DNA of 62,181 nt, counting the filler, from Sluysia triapertura (Eukaryota), in NCBI GenBank assembly GCA_046118255.1. It is 5 parts of 5 records of this genome, joined end to end, with 100 filler letters (N's around TTAATTAATTAA, not from the genome) between each part and the next. Parts side by side here need not be neighbours in the genome. Positions count along the whole stretch, not along the records: positions 50,721 to 62,181 come from JBJNIA010184502.1; 4 more parts are not named here. One strand, given 5' to 3'. Shown piece after piece: positions 8,192 through 62,181 of this stretch (positions are counted from its first letter, which is position 1; every line of letters begins with the position of its first letter). The notes beneath the pieces were generated by a model that saw only the letters and a program-made list of their open reading frames with translations, made no database searches and was not told where the DNA came from. Both the position numbers and the translations under genes were made by a program.

Positions 8192-8800
8192 TTATTTTAT
8201 TTTATAATTCATAAAACAAAGACAAAATTTATTCATTTTTATAAAATTTTTAACATGTAAACTTAAATTTTGTTCTGTGTCGGGAAGTGCCATCAAAGAT
8301 AATATCAGTTCGTGGATTCTACGATGGTGATTTGTCAACTCTGACGTCCAACCAAAAATATCTACGATTTTAGACGTATTATGTGAATACAAACAATTAC
8401 TGCCGAATTTTGAACACTTCCAACTTTGGGTCGTACCGTATAGACACAAACCGGACTTGAAGATTGTTGTTCGTTTTTGTTATGTACAGGACTGATGGAA
8501 TCATTTGAATTCTGGTTGTAAAAATATCACGATCAATGATGAAGTCTATCTATATGTGCAACTTTATCCGAGTAAAAGTTTTAGATTCTAAATCTAATTT
8601 TTGAGGATTGTATGAAAAGGAATTTGTAGAATTTAACTTCATTTCTCTATCACTAATTTTACTATTGATATGTGTCAATACATCCGGCTTTCATCGATAA
8701 TACTTGAATTGTATCTAATAATTCGCAAGCTTCAATCATTTGTTTATTTGATATTCTTGTCTCTTTAGGCTTTATACAACATTCATTGATAACTATAACT
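8192..8800 (-). pseudogene. Unkempt-like CCCH zinc-finger cassette (frameshifted), directly downstream of the E(z) fragment
   Basis: FKSGLCLYGTTQSWKCSKFGSNCLYSH is C-x9-C-x6-C-x3-H (8381-8446), the spacing of Unkempt ZF3 as recalled (YKTGxCIHETDxxGxCxKNGLHCAFAHG). An upstream FIIDRDIF motif is shared with the 51.6 kb copy. Confidence 0.6.
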
Positions 8801-50720: not shown

Positions 50721-51131
50721 ATTTTAATATATAAGTTAGAATTTTCATTTATTCTGTGAATATATTGAAATTTAGAGGATAATCAACAATTAGTAACTAT
50801 TTCACAATCACTGAAGATACATTAAAAAATTTTAGAATTAATTTAACTATTAAATTCTTGTTACTAATTTGGATTTAAAACCGAACAGTGAAATTATAAA
50901 ATTTTTATTGAAGATTTAAAGTTTACAGAAATTGTATTTAAAATTTTATATAATTTATTAAAATTAAAATAAACATAACTTATTAAACATTATTAATAAC
51001 ATTTATTAACATAAATTTTTTTATTGTTACTTGAACATATATGCTCCGTCCTTCATAAAATCCTATTAATAAAATTATGAAATTATTAAAATTAAGATCA
51101 AGAGTTATAAGATTATTAAAAAAAACATAAT

Positions 51132-52198
51132 TTACTTTATTGAAGTCTTTGTTGAGATTAGTACCAGCTTGTTAAATCCATGTGCATACGGACAAAGATC
51201 TGCATATTTGACGCATTTACCTGACGATGTGGATTGATAAGGACAAATTGCGCATTTTAGAAAATTTATTTTATCATTTACTTCTCTTTTTCCATCATTA
51301 GTTTCCACATTAATTGGACAGAATGACATATGATCAATTGCCGTTTTGGTATTTAAATCTTTCAATGCATTGAGATTCGAATTAATTACATTTGGAGCAT
51401 CATTATGTAAATATTGTAAATTTAGATGTAAATTTTTAGTTTTATAAATTTAGTAAATTTAATTTAGTTTATATTACTAAATTTAATTTAGATTTTATAT
51501 TACCAACTAAATTTTGTTGAAAAAATAATAAATTAAATTTTAAGTATAGTTTATTTACATAATTAAAATGTTATCTTAGTAATCACAAATTAACGTTTCT
51601 TTGTAGAAACAATGGATTATTTTATAGAATTAACTGTTAAATAAATCACGATCAATAATTAGAATTTCTTTAAATTTAATATTCCTAAATGAATATTGGT
51701 GGTGGAATGAATTGGACCTGTAGAACACTCGATACGAAATTGATTGAAATAACACATTTTCTTCTTGATATTCTTTAATTGAAACATCTTTGTCACGTCC
51801 TTTAGATTTTCTACACGTTGATTTCTGGACGGAACATAATAAGTAGACTTGCAAGTTGGTGGCGTTATATCGATTATCATAAGTTGAATTTATTAATAAT
51901 TTTAATATCATAGCTGGTTGAATTATCATTGGTAGAATTTGGTAAGGCCTAAACACCATAAAATACTTGACATTTGAACCGATACGTCGATTAACTTAAA
52001 TAGTTCTGCACTTAATTCCAATTTTGATTTTTGAATAAAATCGTGATTTTCAATGGGTGCATTATAGTAACTAAGATGCTTATGATAATTTGGTGAGGAT
52101 AATGATTTATACAATTTTAAACGTTTAGCTGCTAATAGAATCGGTTTTACCACAATGTGTGAATGTCTTGTTGTTAGATTGACTAATATTGGTATCAT
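51132..52198 (-). pseudogene. Intronless, frameshifted Unkempt-like tandem CCCH zinc-finger cargo gene
   Basis: CPINVETNDGKREVNDKINFLKCAICPYQSTSSGKCVKYADLCPYAHG versus Unkempt CPFLHRTTGDTERRYHLRYYKTGxCIHETDxxGxCxKNGLHCAFAHG. Upstream lie LKNIKKKMC..C..H (ZF1-like) and IIDRDLFNS. Confidence 0.7.
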
Positions 52199-52269
52199 TA
52201 AAGCATATATTAACTTACATTATTAAATTTTTATGTCGAACTTTTAACTATGTGTATTTTTATTTGTGT

Positions 52270-53180
52270 TAGATGATCGATAATTGGTCATCCAACCAGA
52301 ATTGTTTGTCTGGAAATTTACAAACTTGATTCTGGTTGGATAGCCAGTAACATTGATGCAAAATTTATAATTATGCTAAAATAATCACTGCTAATGATTA
52401 GCCATCATCAGTGTTGACGTAAATATGTCAACAGTAATGCACAATTTCAACACTTGTGATGGTAGTAACAATTTTTTTATTAAATTAATTCAAATTTATG
52501 AAATTTTTCATAATAATAATAATGATAAAGCTGTTATTATTCCTAATATTACTTTTATATAAAAAAATCAAAAATGCATAAATCCCTTGTAATAAGTATA
52601 CACGATCTTTCTAATTTTTCCTATGAATTCTTAACATATCTTAAATTAACAGAGAAATAAAATTTGCATATATTTAGACTAAAAATCTTTAGTCGTAATC
52701 TTATATGGTAAGAATGCTTTTGTTATGTGGTAAAATGTAGGATGTTAGAGTGAATTTCTAGAAAATAACTCATGTTTTTGACTGAAAACGACATTTAAAC
52801 ATTAAGAGATTGCGAACAAAAAATACATTAAGAAGAGGGTGGTTTAGTAAGTGTGAAACAATAAATTATAGTGTAGCTCTTAGTATATTTGAAGGTTATA
52901 GTGCACTGTTTTACGTGATTTGTTTTCTTGTTGTTTTGAATGTTATTATATTTTGTGTTGTTAGTAGTTATGTAATGATAAATGATGGATTTAAGGTGTT
53001 GTAATTGATTCGAAAATATCGAGTAGATCATTTCAAATGTAGTTGTTGTTTGATTGTTATGTGTTTTTGATGAATTTGTTGGTGTAAATTGATGGTATTG
53101 AATGTAAATGTGAAGTGTGAGTATTAAATGTTAGAGGTTGTTTTATAAAATTTTAATAGTATTAAGGGTTGACCACCACA
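52270..53180 (-). mobile_element. LTR-like terminal region of the cargo-carrying element family (copy 4)
   Basis: Minus strand starts TGTGGTGGTCAACCCTTAA at 53180, followed by a CA-rich tract and a promoter-like block at 52280-52440 just upstream of ATG 52198. Confidence 0.68.
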
Positions 53181-55029
53181 GAAATAATGAAATTTAAGGA
53201 AATTAATAAAATTATGAAATTATTAATTAGAATTTTACGCTAATAAAATTTTTAGTAGCTATAAATTTTTATCAAAGCTATTCACAAAATTTTAATGCCA
53301 TTTGCTGTTATAAATAAAAACCGAAAAAAATGTAGACATTTAACAATCTAATATTGAAAGTAGAGATAATTCGACAAACCTTTCTTGATAATCAAAATAA
53401 CTAACAAGTAGTCAATATATAATTTGATATTTTTCATAATGTGATTCGAAGCAACTAGAAATAATTCAACAAACCATGGAGAAATCATGGTGTAAAAAGC
53501 GTGAATATACAATTTACTCAAATTCTGAACAAAATAGGTTATTGATAAAATCCATACGAAAAAGTTATTATTCTAATAATAATTTTAATAAATTATATAT
53601 CAGAATCCCAAGTAATCTTGCTGTAATTCTATAAGTATGGAATTAAATTTTAAACTCGCCTAAAGATTGAATTTTAAACTCTAAAGAATCTCAGAGTCAA
53701 AATTGATATTATAATTTCATTCTGCAGCACAATTTTAACATTATCGTAATCACTTGCATAACGAAATAGCGGTTCTCATAAACCTAGGATCGTAGGCGAA
53801 CTCATAATATAAATCTTATTTATTGATCATGGTAAGTTGAACACTAAGAGAAATCCCGACAGATTTTAATTAGGATTCTTTCGTAAAATAGGATTTGAAA
53901 TATAGAGAGTTTACTGACGATACATAATCGGTTTAACAAATTACAATGATTTTAGCAATTAAATTATTTTTTAAACAAAAAATATTTTATATAACGCAGT
54001 ATAACAATTACTTAATCTGCTTATCAGCAAAGTTATTGAAAATTTTACTTATCCAAATTAAAAGGATGTTTCAAGTTAATGTTTTTATGACTTAATCGTA
54101 AAATTGGCTTTATACAATTATATTTTCTAAAATTTACAATTATATAATTCAATACAAATAAATCAAAAAATTAATGAAAAATGGTGGTTACATACAAAAA
54201 ATATAAAATTTATTATATAATTCAAAATCAAATTATATAATATATTTAATTAAATCAAAAATTTAATTAAAATATTTTCTACACAATAATGTTTATACAC
54301 TAAGTTAATAAATATATAAAAGTTTACCAGATTATTAATAATCAAAAGTTAAAAAGATTAAATTAAATTAATTTAAATTAAAAAGTTAAATTATTATAGA
54401 ACAATTAAAAGTTCTCTTAAAATTAACAACTAAAATTTAAGTGGAAAAATTACTGCACAAATTAAAAAATGAATAACATAATATCACACTAATGGTTAAT
54501 TAAAATCTATACTCTGTAAATTATAATCAAGGATTTCTGGAACCAGTGAAAAATCACTCAATTTGTAAATTTATAACTGAATATAAAACTTATAAGTTTG
54601 TCTATTTAAAAGTAAAATTTCGATCAATATTCATACTAATATGGTGACCTTAAATTAATTTTACTGGTAAAGGTCTTTAATGTTTAAAATATTCAAATAT
54701 TATAATTTTATTATTATTGATTTTTTATTAATTAAAACTAATTAACGTTTTTTGTTATTTAATTAACCATTAAAGTATAATCTAATATTAAAATATAAGT
54801 ACATAAAATTAATATAAAATTGAAATACAAAAACATATACAAAACATAATCTACAACCTAAATCTAATTTTTTCATCAACTTTTTTCTGACAGTAAGTAA
54901 GGATATCTTTGACAATTTTCTTTGAGGAAAATTTACGAGATTAAATTAAATTTGTAGGTTAAAATAGTTATACAAATATGTAATATGCCCAAATAGTAGG
55001 GATAGATTACAAAGAAAATAAAAGAATAC

Positions 55030-55560
55030 TTAGAAACCGAAATAGGTGGAACTCATTAGAAGATATTAGGATGTCAAAACTCATGAATGAATTCAGAGAT
55101 TTCATGTCGCAATTTGCTTATACTATTAAGTCTAATGTAACTTTTCCAGAAATGCATAAGTTTAGTGAAGCTGAAGAAAAACTTTGCGATTTCTTGTTCG
55201 AATATGACAGCATAGCAGAAGTAAACAAGTGGAGTGAAATTGAAAAAGTTAAGTGAATACAAAACTATCTGACAGGTATAGCTATTCAAACCTATGAGGA
55301 AATAGATATTTCAAAAAATCAAAACTTGCACACTTTCGTGGACTCATATTCTGAAAAATTTACTTTAGATAACATTGGGAAATTTTATGCAAAACCGTTA
55401 GTAACTGTGTACGAATTTGCTTGCGCACTAAAGAGTCTTGTAGAAAGAGCAAAAATTCCAACTTTTAAAAAAATAACTTTAATAGATCAATTTAATCGTT
55501 GACTTCGTCCCGAATTGAGAATTTATGTCAGTAATTTAAGGAAACAGTCAGTAAATTAAG
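55030..55560 (+). mobile_element. Ty3/gypsy gag relic
   Basis: PEMHKFSEAEEKLCDFLFEYDSIAEVNKWSEIEKVK*IQNYLTGIAIQTY, then VYEFACALKSLVERA and DQFNR*LRPELR: retrotransposon gag pattern. Confidence 0.75.
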
Positions 55561-57111
55561 AGGCATCGAGAGATCTCGAGCCGTAAAGAAGGACAATATA
55601 AGTTATATAATTATGAGAATTTTGGTTTAACTTTACTTTATATAAGTATAAATGTAATTAGGTAAAATATATTTTGTAATTTTAATCTTATGTAAATCTG
55701 TAATTTTATATAATTTTAAAATATAATAATATAATTTTTTCATATTCATATAATTAGGTAAAATGTATGTAGTTATAAAAATATTTAGAAAGAAGTTGTT
55801 ATATATTTTGTTATTTATTAATTTGTTGATATTATTTAAAATTATTAATATTATTATTAAAAAAGTATTTATGTTATTATTATTGTATCATTATAATTAT
55901 TTATTAATTATTAAATATTATTATTATAAAATTATAAAATTTCATTTATTAGAAATTTATCATCATTCGTAATATTTAACATCATAAAATGTTAACAGTT
56001 AATAATGAGTAGTATCATGAATTAGAATTTTAATTGTCAATGACCTCACACAGCAAAAAATATAAAAACTAAATAGTCATCATTAGTAAATCATAAATGA
56101 GTATCACAAACGATTCATTGTTTAAATTTTGATCTAACAATAATTATATGTTCAGTTCAAGAAATTTAATTTATTTAACTTTTGAGAAATCGTCAGACAT
56201 TAATCACTTCAAGAAAATTGATCTGTTTACTAAGTATATTTTTGAATAATTCAATTAGTTAAAGAGAAAAAACAATAATCGTTAGTATTTAAAAGTTAAG
56301 TTTGATTTAACATTTTATTAACTTAATACGAAAAAATATGATAATATTACAGTTAAATTTAAGTTGACAGTTGACTTTATTAAAGACAGTTACGAAAATA
56401 TTATTGTTAAATAATATTATTAAAATAAATACTATCTCAATTTCAGTTATTATTTAAATTTGGATTATTTATTTGGATTACTACAGTTTAAGTAAATAAT
56501 CATTGTTACATAAATTTTGTTTTAATTATTAAGTCCGATTTTGTCAATATTTTTATTGATATTTTATAAAATTTTTACAAATCTACATAAATATTGATTA
56601 CATTTAACATACGTAAGCTGCACTACTATTTTATAAAATTATTTACCTGTATACGTATTAATTTTGTGTAATATAAATTAACGAATTTTCTTATTTTTAA
56701 AAATAGTTGCTCAGTAGTAGTAGGATTCTTCCGTCACGAAAATAAATTTAAATAACACAGTTACAAATATTTAAAAATATATTTGGCATAATAAAAAATT
56801 GTTGATCATAATTTTTATAATAATTCTAATTTTTATAATCTTTTTAGATCCAATATAAAATAATATATTAATTAATCTCGCTAAACTTAGCGGAACATTA
56901 ATCAAAAGCTGTCCAAAGTCATTTTCTTTAACCTCCAGTACTTTGAATTTTCTTTTAACGCTGATATCTATGCATCGGCCCTTAAGTGCGTAAGCCCGGT
57001 ATAAAGGGAACTCACGAATATAAATACATAAATAAAAATACATTAAAAATTTTATATTAATTTCCAAGCCAAAACCCATAAATTCTCACAATATTATACG
57101 TATTAATGTGT

Positions 57112-57680
57112 TTATGTGAGTCCTTTATGATAATGGGCTTTGACACTTAAAGACCACTTCATAGATGTCAGCCTAAAAGATAAGTTCTTCTCGGCGCCAT
57201 TAAACTTGCGCATTTCTGGAAGTATTACTATTGGCTTAATATTCTGAGTCAGTTGAGTCATACACTCCTTAAATTTTTCATATGGTACTGCCATTGTAAA
57301 TATTTCAAGTGAGTTACTTCTTAGAGTTATCTTATATTTCTTCTTAGGATTATTATTAATAATCCTAATAATAAGCACTTATTAACTTAGCTTAATAAAC
57401 TTATAACCATAAACTTAACCTTAGATTCAACTTAATAATCAACTTAAACTTATAAACTTCAAAGTATACTTTTAATCAAAAACTTAAATTCACAATCAAA
57501 AGTAAACGTGAAGATCAAATGATCAAATCTTAATAAACTTTATTCAACTTAACAATATCAATCGACAAATATAATTTGAAATTCGAATTAACTTTAATAA
57601 ACTTGAACTTATCAAATAATGCTTAATTTAATAGACTTATAATATGCTTTGAGTTGTCCAAATTCTGGAGCCAAAATTTG
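57112..57680 (-). mobile_element. Second gypsy gag 5' relic with leader
   Basis: KFKECMTQLTQNIKPIVILPEMRKFNGAE parallels EFRDFMSQFAYTIKSNVTFPEMHKFSEAE at 55071; a possible PBS start TGGCTCC lies at ~57673. Confidence 0.6.
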
Positions 57681-59079
57681 CAAATGTTTCTTAAAAAAAC
57701 TTACTCTTAACTTCACATTATCAGAGAAATCGGTCCACCTAATATATATTGTTTATACCACTATTGGAGACGCATTATTAGGATTTAGTATGCTTGCTTA
57801 AAAGTATTTAGACTTCACTTATAACTCTTGTTAAATCAAATAATCAATTAAATTGAATTAGTTTATATTTTATAATTACGCAACCCGTATTAAGGTGTTG
57901 CTTTCTTCAAAATAAATGTAAATTTTGCAACCTTTTTTATGGTGTTGCTTCGAGAAATATAGAGTTTAAACATAATTATTAAAAACGAACCTAAACTGAA
58001 ACCTTTTTTATTACACAAATAGTCAATAAACTTACACTAATCAATGAACTTGCAATAGTTGATAAAAAATATAATAATAATAAATTTAACAGAGTAATTC
58101 AACCTCAGTTGATTACGGTTGATTTTAATGAAAGTTACGCAACTCTTATTAAGATGTTGCATTAAAAAAGAAATGAATTTAAGTTGATTTTAGGATTCCA
58201 TTGGAGGTAAATCGGACCTTATCAAAAAATTAAATTAATTGTGCATGGACTGATTTACAATTTTCAATTTTGTCTTCTTGGATTAAATTCTTGTTTTTTA
58301 AATTTAAACTCTTGATCTAAAAAAATTGTGTTAAAAATATATTTCTTACTTCTATTTATATCGATCCAATTAAATTTAGCAAAACAAAATATTTTAATAA
58401 ATTCGAAAAAATATGTTTATTTTTTATTTAATATAAAATTTTATTTGATATTAATATTAATTTTAATATTTTCTCATAAAATTTTAATATTTTAAATTTT
58501 CTATGATAATATTTAAATTAATTATTTTTATAATAAAAGTAATATTTTAATATTTTTTTAAATAAAAATAATATTTTACAATTTTACAATTATAATACAT
58601 AACAAATATATATATATATATATACTAAATACTAAACATAGTTAACTTGTGTGTAATAATATAAATATAGTAGTAAATACCAAATTGATTTGTGTGTAAA
58701 TACTAAACAGTAATTAAAATAAATATTGATTTGTATAAATATAGTAACATAGTTAAGAAATTATGTAAATTTAAATCAATAATTATATTATTTAATTGGA
58801 ATAATGTGTGTTAATATTTAATTATATTATTTGCTTGGAAATTATTATTTACTTGGAACCATTTCATTTAATAAAGGTAAGAAATTATTTTTGTATAATT
58901 TTAAAATTAATTATTTTAAAACAAACTCTGATTATTTTTGTGTATTAATTTTTGTAAGAGTAACTATATTTTATTTATTTAAATTGTTAACTATATTTTA
59001 TTTGTTTAAATTCTTATGCAAGGTCGTTTAATTTTATATATAAATACTTAGCATTTTTACCACTTAAACATAACGTTTG

Positions 59080-59800
59080 ACAATTCTTTTGTCAAATAAA
59101 TCATTCACGCAGAATTCTCGTTTCTTGTAACAAAAGAACAGGCTATCTGAGATTATTGAAAAATCTTCACATAACGATCCTTAACGTGGATTTTCATTCG
59201 TTTTGAAATTATTGAAATTTCATCGTTAGTTTTTTATGTTTAAGTTTTTTCGCAACTTTTAATGTTGCATCTTTAAAATCAACTTAAATTTTCTATTTAA
59301 TTTTCCAATAGCTATCTTTTATTGATAGCTCATTAAAATAATTATTTAAACTAACCACTGTAGAGATTATTCAAGGAATAATCCTGTAAAAATTATATCT
59401 ATTATATAATATTGTTTTATTGATTGTATTCATTTTTTTCGTTTGTTATTAATAAACATATTATTTTATGATTATTTTTAATTCATTTTAAAATCTGCAC
59501 AAAGAATAGGTTCGGTGTAAGAACCTTATTAAAATCTTAATAGTAAATTTAAAGGTTCAATTTAAGAACCAAATTAAAATCATCTCTGGTTCAAAGTAAG
59601 AACCATATTAAAATCTCGTTAAACTAAAGTATAAAGTTCAAATCCTCCTTAAAAGATTAGTGATATTATAATTAAACCACTTCCACGAATTCTTACATAA
59701 AAAATCCAACGGTTGGCCATATAAGTAAGTCCAATACGTTGGTGGACTCAGTTTTAAGATTATTTTTATTCTCTGCATACTTTACGTCACATTTTCTTAC
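59080..59800 (+). repeat. Dispersed repeat family C with hairpin cluster (copy 2)
   Basis: Colinear with 18350-19000. Confidence 0.85.
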
Positions 59801-60669
59801 ATAAATATATACTCCAACTAAATAGGTCAAAGTCTCTATGATAAAATATTCCAATATCTACAAAATTTAACTATTATAGGAAACTATTCAACATTTAAAA
59901 ATTTATTTTAAATAGATCAATAAAATATTCTAATTAAAATCAATATTTATTTATTAAAAAATTAAAGTAATATGTTACCAAAAGCATGGATCTTCATGTT
60001 TGTAATCAGCGGTGAATAAAAACGCCTAAGTGTTCTAATTTATACCTTTTTCATCATCCAATAATTTATACATTCGCAATCAGGAATTACTCTTATACAA
60101 ATCATCAGAACCTCTTTTAAAGATTAAACCAAATAAAACGACTTTGACACTTACGACCTATCAAGAAAAACAATACAATTCGATTAACAATCAATTCTCA
60201 TTTTTTTCTTCTACTTAACTCGATCTAGTTTTTCATGAATCATTTCTTACATTAAAATAACAATTATTATTATTGACACACTCAAAAATAATGAATTTAA
60301 TTTTAGTTTTTACATTTTATTTAATTTTCAATTCATCACACTCAATTTTGTAATGGAAAATGTTTAAGGTTCTCATTCAAAAACTACCCATTTCACAAAC
60401 ATCTCAACCTCATTTTTGGATTCTCCTATTTCATAGCAATCACTCCATACCCAACTCATCATCTCTTCATCATTCTAAATATGAAAATTTTATCATTTTA
60501 AATTAAAAGTTAATTAAAATTCGACTTTATTCAATATAGAGGCTTTCCTCGCATGAACTCGGTCAAACCTTATCTTCATCGAAAGGTCTCTTTAAGACAA
60601 ATACATGCACAATCACAGTTTTAACATAGCATTCTTCATGCGAAAGTTATTCACGCAAACGTAATTGTT

Positions 60670-60975
60670 CTTAATTTAGTTAATTAAGATTTTAATTAAT
60701 TATTTATTTATTTTAACTTATTTTATTCTAAGTTTAAAGGTTTTAATGTGGTTTATAAACTATTAACTCCTTTATAAGGTACTCAGGAGGCTCTAGACAC
60801 TTTCACCTTCACCACTCTGATTCCTTTTTCCATTTTTTTAATTTCAATTATCAATGAATTAAATTTGTTATATTATCATAATTATTATCATAATATTATC
60901 ATATTTCAGATATTTTATAAAATTCCCTTACTTCTTAATCCATTCTCTATACACCAACTGGACAATCCCACCACA
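60670..60975 (-). repeat. Dispersed LTR-like repeat, family B (copy 2)
   Basis: Matches 11860-12450; the minus strand begins TGTGGTGGGATTGTCC at ~60975. Confidence 0.7.
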
Positions 60976-62181
60976 TGAACAAAAAGAAATACAAGAAGAC
61001 AATAAAATTATAAATTGAAATGAGTAGAACTTACATTTGACAAATATAAAGGCTTACATAACTTAAGTAAAATATCAAAATGCATGATTTTTAGAATATT
61101 AACTAAATTATGGAAAGTAGTCTAAATCACAATGAGTTATTTAGCTTTCAGCATAATTTATTACTTGAAAGTTTCGAAAGAAAACGTATTCTTGAATATC
61201 TAGCGATGACGATTTGGAAAGTATATGATATTTTATTGAAGCTAATTATAATTAATGATAAAAATGTAAACTTCTGCGGAAAATAGAAACTGCAATATCG
61301 TATTACATAAAATTGTCAAATAATTTAAGCCCACTTAGTAAAATCAAGATAAAATTTGATTAATTTTTTATTTACTATTCCTAAATTTATTTTATGGTAC
61401 GAATATTTGCATTACAGAGAAAGAAAATAGAAGTTTCTCAAAATATTATTAGAAAGGACTAAAGAGTATTTATATCAAGTAATTAAAAATTTATTGGAAG
61501 CGGTTAGTTTTATTTATTCAACCAAAAGAAGTGAAAATCTATAAACAAACGAAAACAAGTAGTACTACATTTAATGATAAAATGAATGATGTAAATTTTA
61601 TCGTAATTTCTCTCAAGTAATACAAAATGCAGCTTTCGAAATATTGAAGCAGCATCAGAAACATATTACCTTGATCTTATAATATAAGTTGTGCACTGCT
61701 TTATAATGAAATTTAATTTATTTTCTTAACTGTACAAATGTGTTATCTGTTAGGGTTCACCTACAATCTACGATTTATGGCGACGTATCCGTAAGGTTTT
61801 TATGCAAATTTTAATTTGAAGGTCTTTATGTAATATATTGAATCGTGAGTCGTTCAATCATATTCTTGTTCAAAGATTTAATTCATATTATCCTTGATTC
61901 TTATAGAACTCTATAAGTTTTAGTTCTAATTATGTTTAAATGTAATTCTCTTTAGATTTCCAAAAATTATAATTATTAGTTGTATAGTTTATATCTAGTA
62001 TTAAATTTTGTTAGATTTTTATCAATTTTACTAATTCAATTAAGACTTTAATCACTTTTCTTTAAATTTCTTATTTTAATCGTTCGCCATTTAGTCTGAT
62101 TCTATTTAACTTTAACTTTTAAAATAAAAACCCAAGATAGGGACACTAAACTTTATTATACATAATTCTAGGACTAGAATG

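What the first reader, a model, noticed from the sequence alone, without database searches (positions are those of the whole stretch)
51132..52198. Unkempt-derived CCCH cluster amplified as TE cargo
The finger at 51180-51245 and the one at 8381-8446 share the unusual C-x9-C-x6-C-x3-H spacing. Both are preceded by IIDRD(L/I)F and by a helical segment ending in YQ-stop. The spacing and the preceding linker match Unkempt ZF2-ZF3 as I recall them. Two diverged intronless copies (perhaps a third at 1-330) on separate scaffolds imply an old capture and expansion of a host translational-regulator domain.
Basis: partly seen in the sequence, partly recalled or inferred. Interest (0 to 1): 0.78.

Follow-up and report, generated by a model that had tools for sequence, protein, structure and literature searches.

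The report
Lone Unkempt-type zinc finger in orphan ORFs
A very AT-rich stretch holds three collinear open reading frames whose last one ends in a single zinc finger of the Unkempt third-finger type, but nothing in this piece shows that it is carried or multiplied by a transposable element.

Summary
On the minus strand, 51245-51180 encodes CPYQSTSSGKCVKYADLCPYAH (C-x9-C-x6-C-x3-H), the only CCCH pattern in the piece. IIDRDLF (51659-51639) and a predicted helical ORF ending YQ-TGA-TAA (52198-51923) lie upstream.

The finger is Unkempt-like. Its only meaningful Pfam hit is zf-CCCH_UNK (E 4.7e-7, 30.1 bits, cut-off 31.1). Its best solved relative is mouse Unkempt ZnF1-3, aligned gap-free to ZnF3 with the same spacing. 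The ZnF2-ZnF3 linker adds score beyond chance (anchored shuffle p 0.0014).

It is not a cluster. ZnF2 keeps only its last Cys-Pro. No ZnF1 can be shown. The two upstream ORFs match nothing.

The three ORFs are open far beyond chance (323 codons against 151±20). They show a coding-like GC1>GC2>GC3 gradient. They are not one intronless ORF: A and B differ in frame, and B and C are split by a 14%-GC spacer with 11 stops.

No terminal inverted repeats, transposase, recognised gag or second copy is present. No relative was found in 1.84 billion proteins, in metagenomes or in viral contigs. Amplification could not be tested.

Best reading: a lineage-specific, fast-diverged offshoot of the unk RNA-binding module, live or recently broken. 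TE cargo is unsupported but not excluded.

The parts
51180..51245 (-). Complete CCCH zinc finger, CPYQSTSSGKCVKYADLCPYAH (C-x9-C-x6-C-x3-H), of the Unkempt ZnF3 type
   Evidence: Translation. It is the only CCCH pattern in the piece. Pfam PF25427 zf-CCCH_UNK gives E 4.7e-7 over ORF residues 35-65, that is 51263-51171. It aligns gap-free to 5elh_A CIHETDSKGNCTKNGLHCAFAHG.
51168..51320 (-). Stretch aligned by HMMER to mouse Unkempt 5elh_A residues 77-126: the last Cys-Pro of ZnF2 (the His that follows is replaced by Val), the ZnF2-ZnF3 linker (one residue longer), and ZnF3
   Evidence: E 0.0024 against 177,635 PDB sequences. Anchored shuffle of the pre-finger part: observed score 73 against 55.9 +/- 2.9, p 0.0014. 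The pre-finger part alone is not significant (p 0.55).
51135..51449 (-). Open stretch C, 105 codons; stop TAA at 51134-51132
   Evidence: GC at codon positions 1/2/3 is 0.36/0.32/0.19.
51450..51632 (-). Spacer between B and C: same frame as both, 11 in-frame stops (all TAA or TAG), 14% GC, with a 24-nt tandem repeat at 51450-51503. It is intron-like or an insertion.
   Evidence: The only in-frame GT..AG joins use weak sites: donor at 51634 or 51649, acceptor at 51359.
51633..51995 (-). Open stretch B, 121 codons, ending ..IIDRDLFNS (IIDRDLF = 51659-51639); no recognisable relative
   Evidence: No Pfam hit, no PDB hit, no word-search hit, no Atlas hit. Local alignment to Unkempt 5elh_A 7-61 gives p 0.65.
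51662..51889 (-). Second open frame (76 codons) overlapping B, in the frame of A; holds C-x8-C-x5-H. It is unclear which of the two frames was coding.
   Evidence: No Pfam or PDB hit. Best local alignment to Unkempt 5elh_A 7-61 gives p 0.02, not significant after four tests.
51923..52219 (-). Open stretch A (97 codons; ATG at 52198), ending ..KFYQ followed by TGA TAA (51928-51923); predicted helical hairpin. It overlaps B by 66 nt in another frame.
   Evidence: No Pfam or PDB hit. The Atlas-by-features lead to THAP9/P-element C-terminal domains is weak: score 0.92, 148 of 256 features.
52283..52348 (.). Strong hairpin (about 24 bp stem, 10-nt loop), 85-150 nt 5' of ORF A's ATG; role unknown
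   Evidence: MFE -32.2 kcal/mol (z -7.7) on the + strand and -28.9 (z -7.05) on the - strand. The arms are non-chance. Only sub-threshold miRNA-hairpin matches in Rfam.
51065..51089 (+). Exact 25-nt direct repeat, copy 1 (ATTAATAAAATTATGAAATTATTAA), 43 nt 3' of ORF C's stop
   Evidence: 2 exact matches against 0.01 expected in shuffles. There is no similarity beyond the 25 nt.
53202..53226 (+). Exact 25-nt direct repeat, copy 2, about 1 kb 5' of ORF A. With copy 1 it brackets a 2.1-kb segment holding ORFs A-C and the hairpins.

Best explanation
The locus is the body of a lineage-specific protein-coding gene, or a recently broken copy of one. It descends in part from the N-terminal RNA-binding module of Unkempt.

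Of Unkempt's three-finger unit, only the third finger, the linker before it and the last Cys-Pro of the second finger survive. The other zinc ligands of ZnF2 are replaced, and no ZnF1 can be recognised. Upstream of this remnant sit about 200 codons of coding-like sequence with no known relative. They begin with a predicted helical hairpin.

In this copy the reading is interrupted twice. The first break is a frame change inside a 66-nt zone where A and B are both open; this is a frameshift mutation or an assembly indel. The second is a 14%-GC, stop-filled spacer between B and C that looks like an intron.

If the protein is made (inference), it would be about 250-320 residues with a single CCCH finger. 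One such finger contacts only two or three bases of single-stranded RNA. By analogy with Unkempt ZnF1-3, those bases would be U/A-rich. Useful affinity would then need oligomerisation (the helical N-terminus is a candidate) or a partner protein.

Nothing in this piece shows that the locus is carried by a mobile element.
For: Shown:
- The finger is real and Unkempt ZnF3-like in spacing, flanks (K-x-x-I-C ... AHG) and linker.
- A, B and C are open far beyond chance: 323 codons against 151 +/- 20, with 0 of 2000 shuffles reaching that.
- All three have GC1>GC2>GC3, while the spacer has 14% GC.
- Glutamines inside B and C are all CAA/CAG, while the spacer holds 11 TAA/TAG. So the spacer is non-coding rather than ciliate-code Gln.
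- In-frame GT..AG joins exist for B->C and A->B.

Inferred:
- Canonical Unkempt is very conserved; sponge and human share about 80% similarity in the RNA-binding domains (PMC11436793). A copy lacking the ZnF1 and ZnF2 ligands is therefore not the ordinary orthologue.
- Neutral decay long enough to erase ZnF1 and ZnF2 would, at about 9% stops per codon in this composition, also have closed the frames and eroded ZnF3. The pattern therefore points to long evolution as a coding sequence that kept one finger.
Against: - No relative of A, B or C was found anywhere, so no conservation or selection test was possible.
- The Pfam score is 1 bit under the gathering cut-off.
- The candidate splice sites are weak (ACA|GTTAAT ... 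TTGAAAG|AT). The candidate A->B introns have exon-like composition, so a true frameshift, and hence a pseudogene, is at least as likely there.
- Two frames are open over B, and it is unclear which was coding.
- The AlphaFold model of ORF C is useless, with pLDDT 36.
Confidence: 0.45

Rival explanations
1. TE cargo: a fragment of host unk was captured by a mobile element and multiplied with it. The ORF ends (YQ-stop, IIDRDLFNS-stop) are breaks inherited by all copies.
For: - An exact 25-nt direct repeat brackets a 2.1-kb segment holding the ORFs.
- A very strong hairpin lies near the segment's 5' side.
- The piece is a short, gene-poor, AT-rich scaffold. It holds two related relic ORFs in inverted orientation: 54984-55499 (+) and 57378-57115 (-), 43% identical over 47 aa.
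- There is a weak Atlas lead from ORF A to P-element/THAP9 C-terminal domains.
Against: - No terminal inverted repeats above chance; the best pair flanking the ORFs is 33 nt at 76% in AT-only sequence.
- No poly(A) next to either 25-mer.
- No Pfam-recognised transposase, RT, integrase or gag in 11.4 kb.
- No second copy in the piece.
- No relatives in public data.
- The copy number in the source genome was not measurable here.
Confidence: 0.17
2. An old, dead pseudogene fragment of unk with no present or recent function. On this view the open frames are luck plus locally higher GC.
For: - Zinc ligands are lost in ZnF2, and ZnF1 is absent.
- There is a frame change between A and B and a stop-filled gap between B and C.
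- Splice signals are weak.
- No RNA run was found.
Against: - Openness of 323 codons was never reached in 2000 shuffles of the same, locally GC-richer region.
- The codon-position GC gradient is present in all three stretches.
- ZnF3 keeps all four ligands and the conserved flanks while its neighbours are erased. That is not what uniform neutral decay gives.
Confidence: 0.2
3. These are the 5' exons of the species' own, extremely diverged unk orthologue. ZnF4-6, the coiled coil and the RING would lie beyond the piece's edge at 50721.
For: - The order ZnF2 remnant, linker, ZnF3 matches Unkempt.
- A possible donor (CTG|GTACTA) follows ..AHGFNKL at 51165 (read).
- Only about 410 bp remain before the edge.
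Against: - Unkempt's RNA-binding domains are strongly conserved from sponge to human, while here ZnF1 and ZnF2 are gone.
- About 200 unrelated codons precede the remnant.
- Nothing coding-like lies in 50721-51131.
Confidence: 0.08
4. ORFs A and B are the C-terminal relic of a P-element/THAP9-like transposase. On this view the finger belongs to, or was fused to, that transposase.
For: Atlas by features: the nearest clusters to ORF A are THAP9 C-terminal domain and TNP-like RNaseH_C proteins of arthropods, at score 0.92.
Against: - Only 148 of 256 features are shared and recognition is 1360, both in the range of chance hits.
- No Pfam hit to PF22824, PF12596 or PF21789, even at E 10.
- The three published consensus helices of these domains (..YIAGYVARKL.. 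first) are not found in that order in A then B (bioRxiv 10.64898/2026.08.31.747927).
- No structural match.
- No transposase remains upstream.
Confidence: 0.05

Closest known systems
Unkempt (UNK/UNKL), N-terminal CCCH cluster ZnF1-3 (mouse structure 5ELH)
   Same: - The finger has the ligand spacing of ZnF3 (C-x9-C-x6-C-x3-H) and aligns without a gap.
- It shares K-x-x-I-C before and AHG after the finger.
- The distance from the last Cys-Pro of ZnF2 to the first Cys of ZnF3 is 25 residues, against 24 in Unkempt.
- The Pfam family hit is zf-CCCH_UNK.
   Different: - There is one finger instead of six.
- ZnF2 has lost three of its four ligands.
- ZnF1 is not detectable.
- No RING or coiled coil is present in the piece.
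- About 200 unrelated codons lie upstream.
- The Pfam score is just under the cut-off.
- The reading frame is interrupted.
TTP/TIS11-type tandem CCCH fingers (for example TIS11d, 1RGO)
   Same: These are the second-best PDB matches, at E 0.07-2.5. They share the C..C...C-x-[FY]-AHG pattern.
   Different: - Their spacing is C-x8-C-x5-C-x3-H, and the alignment needs gaps.
- The generic zf-CCCH Pfam model gives no hit.
- There is no second tandem finger and no (R/K)YKTEL lead-in.
Gene fragments carried by transposons (Pack-MULEs, Helitron captures) and LINE-made retrocopies
   Same: A fragment of a host gene's domain sits in repeat-like, gene-poor DNA, bracketed by a short direct repeat.
   Different: No TIRs, no Helitron-type end (short-loop hairpin before CTRR), no poly(A) tail, no 2-10 bp target-site duplication, and no demonstrated multiplicity.

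Membership tests
Unkempt family (UNK/UNKL) | ZnF3-type finger with C-x9-C-x6-C-x3-H spacing and AHG tail | tested here: met
   Gap-free alignment to 5elh_A residues 101-123.
Unkempt family (UNK/UNKL) | Pfam zf-CCCH_UNK (PF25427) at or above its gathering score | tested here: inconclusive
   30.1 bits against a cut-off of 31.1; E 4.7e-7.
Unkempt family (UNK/UNKL) | Compact cluster of three intact CCCH fingers (ZnF1-3) | tested here: not met
   - There is only one CCCH pattern in the piece.
- ZnF2 keeps only its last Cys.
- ORF B, in both frames, is not significantly similar to 5elh_A 7-61.
Unkempt family (UNK/UNKL) | Second cluster ZnF4-6, coiled coil and C-terminal RING | not testable with these tools
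   The piece ends 410 bp 3' of ORF C. Nothing coding-like lies in 50721-51131.
Transposon-carried gene fragment (TE cargo) | Defined element ends (TIRs or LTRs, a Helitron end, or a poly(A) tail) with target-site duplication | tested here: not met
   No inverted repeat above chance flanks the ORFs, and there is no poly(A). The only flanking feature is an exact 25-nt direct repeat with no known meaning.
Transposon-carried gene fragment (TE cargo) | Several copies sharing flanks beyond the captured fragment | not testable with these tools
   - There is no second copy in the piece.
- One DNA run holds a third of the sampled words.
Transposon-carried gene fragment (TE cargo) | Element-encoded protein (transposase, RT, gag) in the same unit or family | tested here: not met
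   No Pfam family at E <= 1 in any ORF of the piece. The paired relic ORFs at 54984-55499 and 57115-57378 have no Pfam or PDB match.
P-element/THAP9 transposase C-terminal domain (ORF A) | Pfam THAP9_C / Tnp_P_element_C match, and the three conserved helices in order | tested here: not met
   No Pfam hit. The published consensus motifs are not found in order. There is only a weak language-model lead.
Processed retrocopy | Continuous intronless ORF, 3' poly(A), flanking target-site duplication | tested here: not met
   There is a frame change between A and B, a 183-nt stop-filled spacer between B and C, and T8 rather than a poly(A) after the stop.

The most novel reading that the evidence does not exclude
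A 2.1-kb unit (51065-53226) is a so far undescribed non-autonomous mobile or duplicative element. It is bracketed by an exact 25-nt direct repeat and carries a strong 5' hairpin. It has captured and spread a one-finger remnant of the host translational regulator Unkempt, seeding a family of small single-CCCH proteins in this lineage.
Probability: 0.1. Interest if true: 0.6.

Novelty: new member of a known kind. Interest (0 to 1): 0.27.

Why it matters
Unkempt is one of the most conserved animal RNA-binding proteins, and its six fingers work as two rigid three-finger units. A paralogue that kept only ZnF3 and joined it to unrelated sequence would be a natural experiment on what a single Unkempt finger can do. 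If such copies were really spread by a mobile element, it would be a rare animal case of an RNA-binding domain moved as transposon cargo. With one copy, no relatives and no expression data, none of this is shown. As it stands, this is a modest curiosity in repeat-rich DNA.

Tried and rejected
- Ciliate code (TAA/TAG = Gln). It fuses B and C into a 413-codon ORF, but shuffles give a mean longest ORF of 376. B and C also use only CAA/CAG for Gln, while the spacer holds 11 TAA/TAG. Rejected.
- ORF B as a decayed Unkempt ZnF1. This was my by-eye reading, in two frames. The Unkempt sequence was confirmed from the PDB tool. Local alignments give p 0.65 (frame of B) and p 0.02 (overlapping frame), not significant after four tests. 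Pfam and PDB give nothing. Not established.
- ORF A as a THAP9/P-element C-terminal domain (Atlas lead). There is no Pfam hit, no motif order and no fold match. Left as a weak lead.
- 'Gag-like' label for the relic ORFs at 54984-55499 and 57115-57378. This was by eye only. There is no Pfam, PDB or word-search support.
- Homologue searches, all blank: word search with C, B and the relic ORF; exhaustive phmmer of the finger ORF against 1.84 billion representatives; metagenome and viral contig scans; exact-protein look-ups.
- Structure of ORF C. The single-sequence model has pLDDT 36 and was unusable.
- Reads.
Only its pieces were searched, by reference.

Full report
**What is there.** The piece (50721-62181) has 23% GC and no N. 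On its minus strand, three collinear stop-free stretches lie within 1.1 kb.
- A (52219-51929) has 97 codons, with an ATG at 52198. It ends ..KFYQ followed by TGA TAA.
- B (51995-51633) has 121 codons and ends ..IIDRDLFNS followed by TAA.
- C (51449-51135) has 105 codons and ends ..AHGFNKLVLISTKTSIK followed by TAA.
- C holds CPYQSTSSGKCVKYADLCPYAH at 51245-51180.
- It is the only CCCH pattern in six frames of the piece, and only 5 of 300 shuffles hold any such pattern.

**Is it coding?**
- The three stretches sum to 323 codons. Shuffles of the same 1.15 kb give 151 +/- 20, and none of 2000 reaches 323.
- All three show GC1>GC2>GC3: 0.35/0.29/0.23, 0.34/0.28/0.28 and 0.36/0.32/0.19.
- The 183 nt between B and C have 14% GC, 11 in-frame stops and a 24-nt tandem repeat.
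- B and C share a frame. The ciliate code would fuse them, but that is no more than chance gives. Gln inside B and C is always CAA/CAG. The spacer is therefore non-coding: an intron or an insertion.
- A and B are in different frames and overlap by 66 nt in which both are open. That is the signature of a single-base frameshift (mutation or assembly indel) in a once continuous ORF.
- The in-frame GT..AG alternatives for A->B (23-53 nt) have exon-like composition.
- For B->C, the only in-frame joins use weak sites: donor 51634 or 51649, acceptor 51359.
- A second frame (51889-51662, 76 codons) is also open over B.

**What the finger is.**
- Pfam gives one meaningful hit, PF25427 zf-CCCH_UNK. E is 4.7e-7 and the score 30.1 bits, one bit under the gathering score. 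No generic CCCH model is hit.
- Against all PDB sequences, the best match is mouse Unkempt ZnF1-3 (5elh_A, E 0.0024). ORF residues 16-66 align to chain residues 77-126: the last Cys-Pro of ZnF2, the linker, and ZnF3.
- TTP-type fingers follow at E 0.07-2.5.
- The finger aligns to CIHETDSKGNCTKNGLHCAFAHG without a gap.
- The pre-finger part alone is not significant (p 0.55). When it is shuffled with the finger held fixed, the observed total score of 73 is reached in only 0.14% of trials. So the linker and the ZnF2 remnant are probably homologous too.

**What it is not.**
- ZnF2 has lost three of its four ligands: its His is now Val, and no upstream Cys pair exists.
- I confirmed the Unkempt ZnF1 region from the PDB tool. 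I then aligned it to A, to B in both open frames, and to C. Nothing survives correction; the best result is p 0.02 in one of four tests.
- Pfam and PDB see nothing in A or B. So there is no cluster, and IIDRDLF cannot be tied to Unkempt.
- ORF A's model is a two-helix hairpin of middling confidence, without fold matches.
- The ESM Atlas places ORF A near THAP9/P-element C-terminal domains (score 0.92). The feature overlap (148 of 256) and recognition value are in the chance range. Pfam does not agree, and the published consensus helices of those domains are not present in order.

**Relatives and copies.**
- No protein in the word-indexed 5.8-billion set shares enough words with B or C.
- Exhaustive phmmer of the finger ORF against 1.84 billion representatives gives no hit at E <= 0.001.
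- Metagenome and viral contig scans are blank.
- The exact ORFs are on no recorded contig.
- Within the piece there is no second copy.
- One coded DNA run holds a third of the sampled words, and no RNA run does.
I kept those places out of all later searches.
- Amplification and expression are therefore untested, not disproved.

**Element ends and context.**
- No inverted repeat above chance flanks the ORFs.
- There is no poly(A) tail and no Pfam-recognised mobile-element protein in the 11.4 kb.
- Two things are non-random and unexplained. The first is an exact 25-nt direct repeat at 51065-51089 and 53202-53226, which brackets the ORFs and shows no similarity beyond the 25 nt. The second is a very stable hairpin at 52283-52348, with z -7.7.
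- Two related relic ORFs in inverted orientation lie at 54984-55499 and 57378-57115. They have no family assignment.

**Reading.**
- Canonical Unkempt is strongly conserved from sponge to human (PMC11436793), so this is not an ordinary orthologue.
- ZnF3 is selectively retained with intact flanks, and the frames are long and open in DNA where about 9% of random codons are stops. Both argue that the sequence evolved for a long time as a coding gene that needed only one finger.
- The frame change and weak splice sites leave open whether this particular copy still works.
- My confidences are as follows.

| Reading | Confidence |
|---|---|
| Lineage-specific Unkempt-ZnF3-derived gene, or a recently broken copy of one | 0.45 |
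| Old dead fragment | 0.20 |
| TE cargo | 0.17 |
| Diverged true orthologue cut by the scaffold edge | 0.08 |
| P-element-like relic | 0.05 |

- The function (weak binding of U/A-rich single-stranded RNA by one finger, helped by oligomerisation through the helical N-terminus) is inference by analogy with Unkempt ZnF1-3. It is not shown.

**Verdict.** The Unkempt derivation of the finger is supported. 'Cluster', 'intronless' and 'amplified as TE cargo' are unsupported in this piece. Interest is modest.

Noticed in passing
window 52283-52348 (both strands): A very stable hairpin in 23%-GC DNA: about 24 bp of stem with a 10-nt loop, MFE -32.2 kcal/mol, z -7.7. It lies 85-150 nt 5' of ORF A's ATG. 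Only sub-threshold generic miRNA-precursor matches appear in Rfam. It could be a small foldback or MITE, a regulatory palindrome or a hairpin RNA.
   Followed up: partly
window 52401-52463: A second, weaker hairpin (16-nt arms at 88%, z -3.3 and -4.1) lies about 55 nt from the first. It contains the internal palindrome TGTTGAC..GTCAACA.
   Followed up: partly
window 51065-51089 and 53202-53226: An exact 25-nt direct repeat (ATTAATAAAATTATGAAATTATTAA), 2137 nt apart, brackets the ORFs and both hairpins. There is no similarity beyond the 25 nt, and 0.01 matches are expected in shuffles. Its meaning is unknown: a recombination or duplication junction, the ends of a unit, or a shared dispersed motif.
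   Followed up: partly
window 54984-55499 (+) and 57378-57115 (-): Two related relic ORFs in inverted orientation, 43% identical over 47 aa (E 7e-8). The first is a 172-codon frame broken by one stop at 55254-55256. They look gag-like by eye (..FPEMHKF..AEEKL..W.EIEK..), but have no Pfam, PDB or word-search support.
   Followed up: partly
window 59509-59616: Three copies of a 29-nt unit, each holding the small palindrome GGTTC-N7-GAACC followed by ATTAAAATC. The spacings are 45 and 34 nt.
   Followed up: no
window 52721-53220: A strong strand asymmetry: GC skew +0.61 (G/T-rich on the + strand, C/A-rich on the minus strand). It lies about 0.5-1 kb 5' of ORF A and holds a 100-codon minus-strand open stretch (53130-52831) of low-complexity T/N/H/Q-rich sequence.
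   Followed up: no
No letters of them were sent to any search afterwards. Nothing is claimed about them.
   Followed up: no
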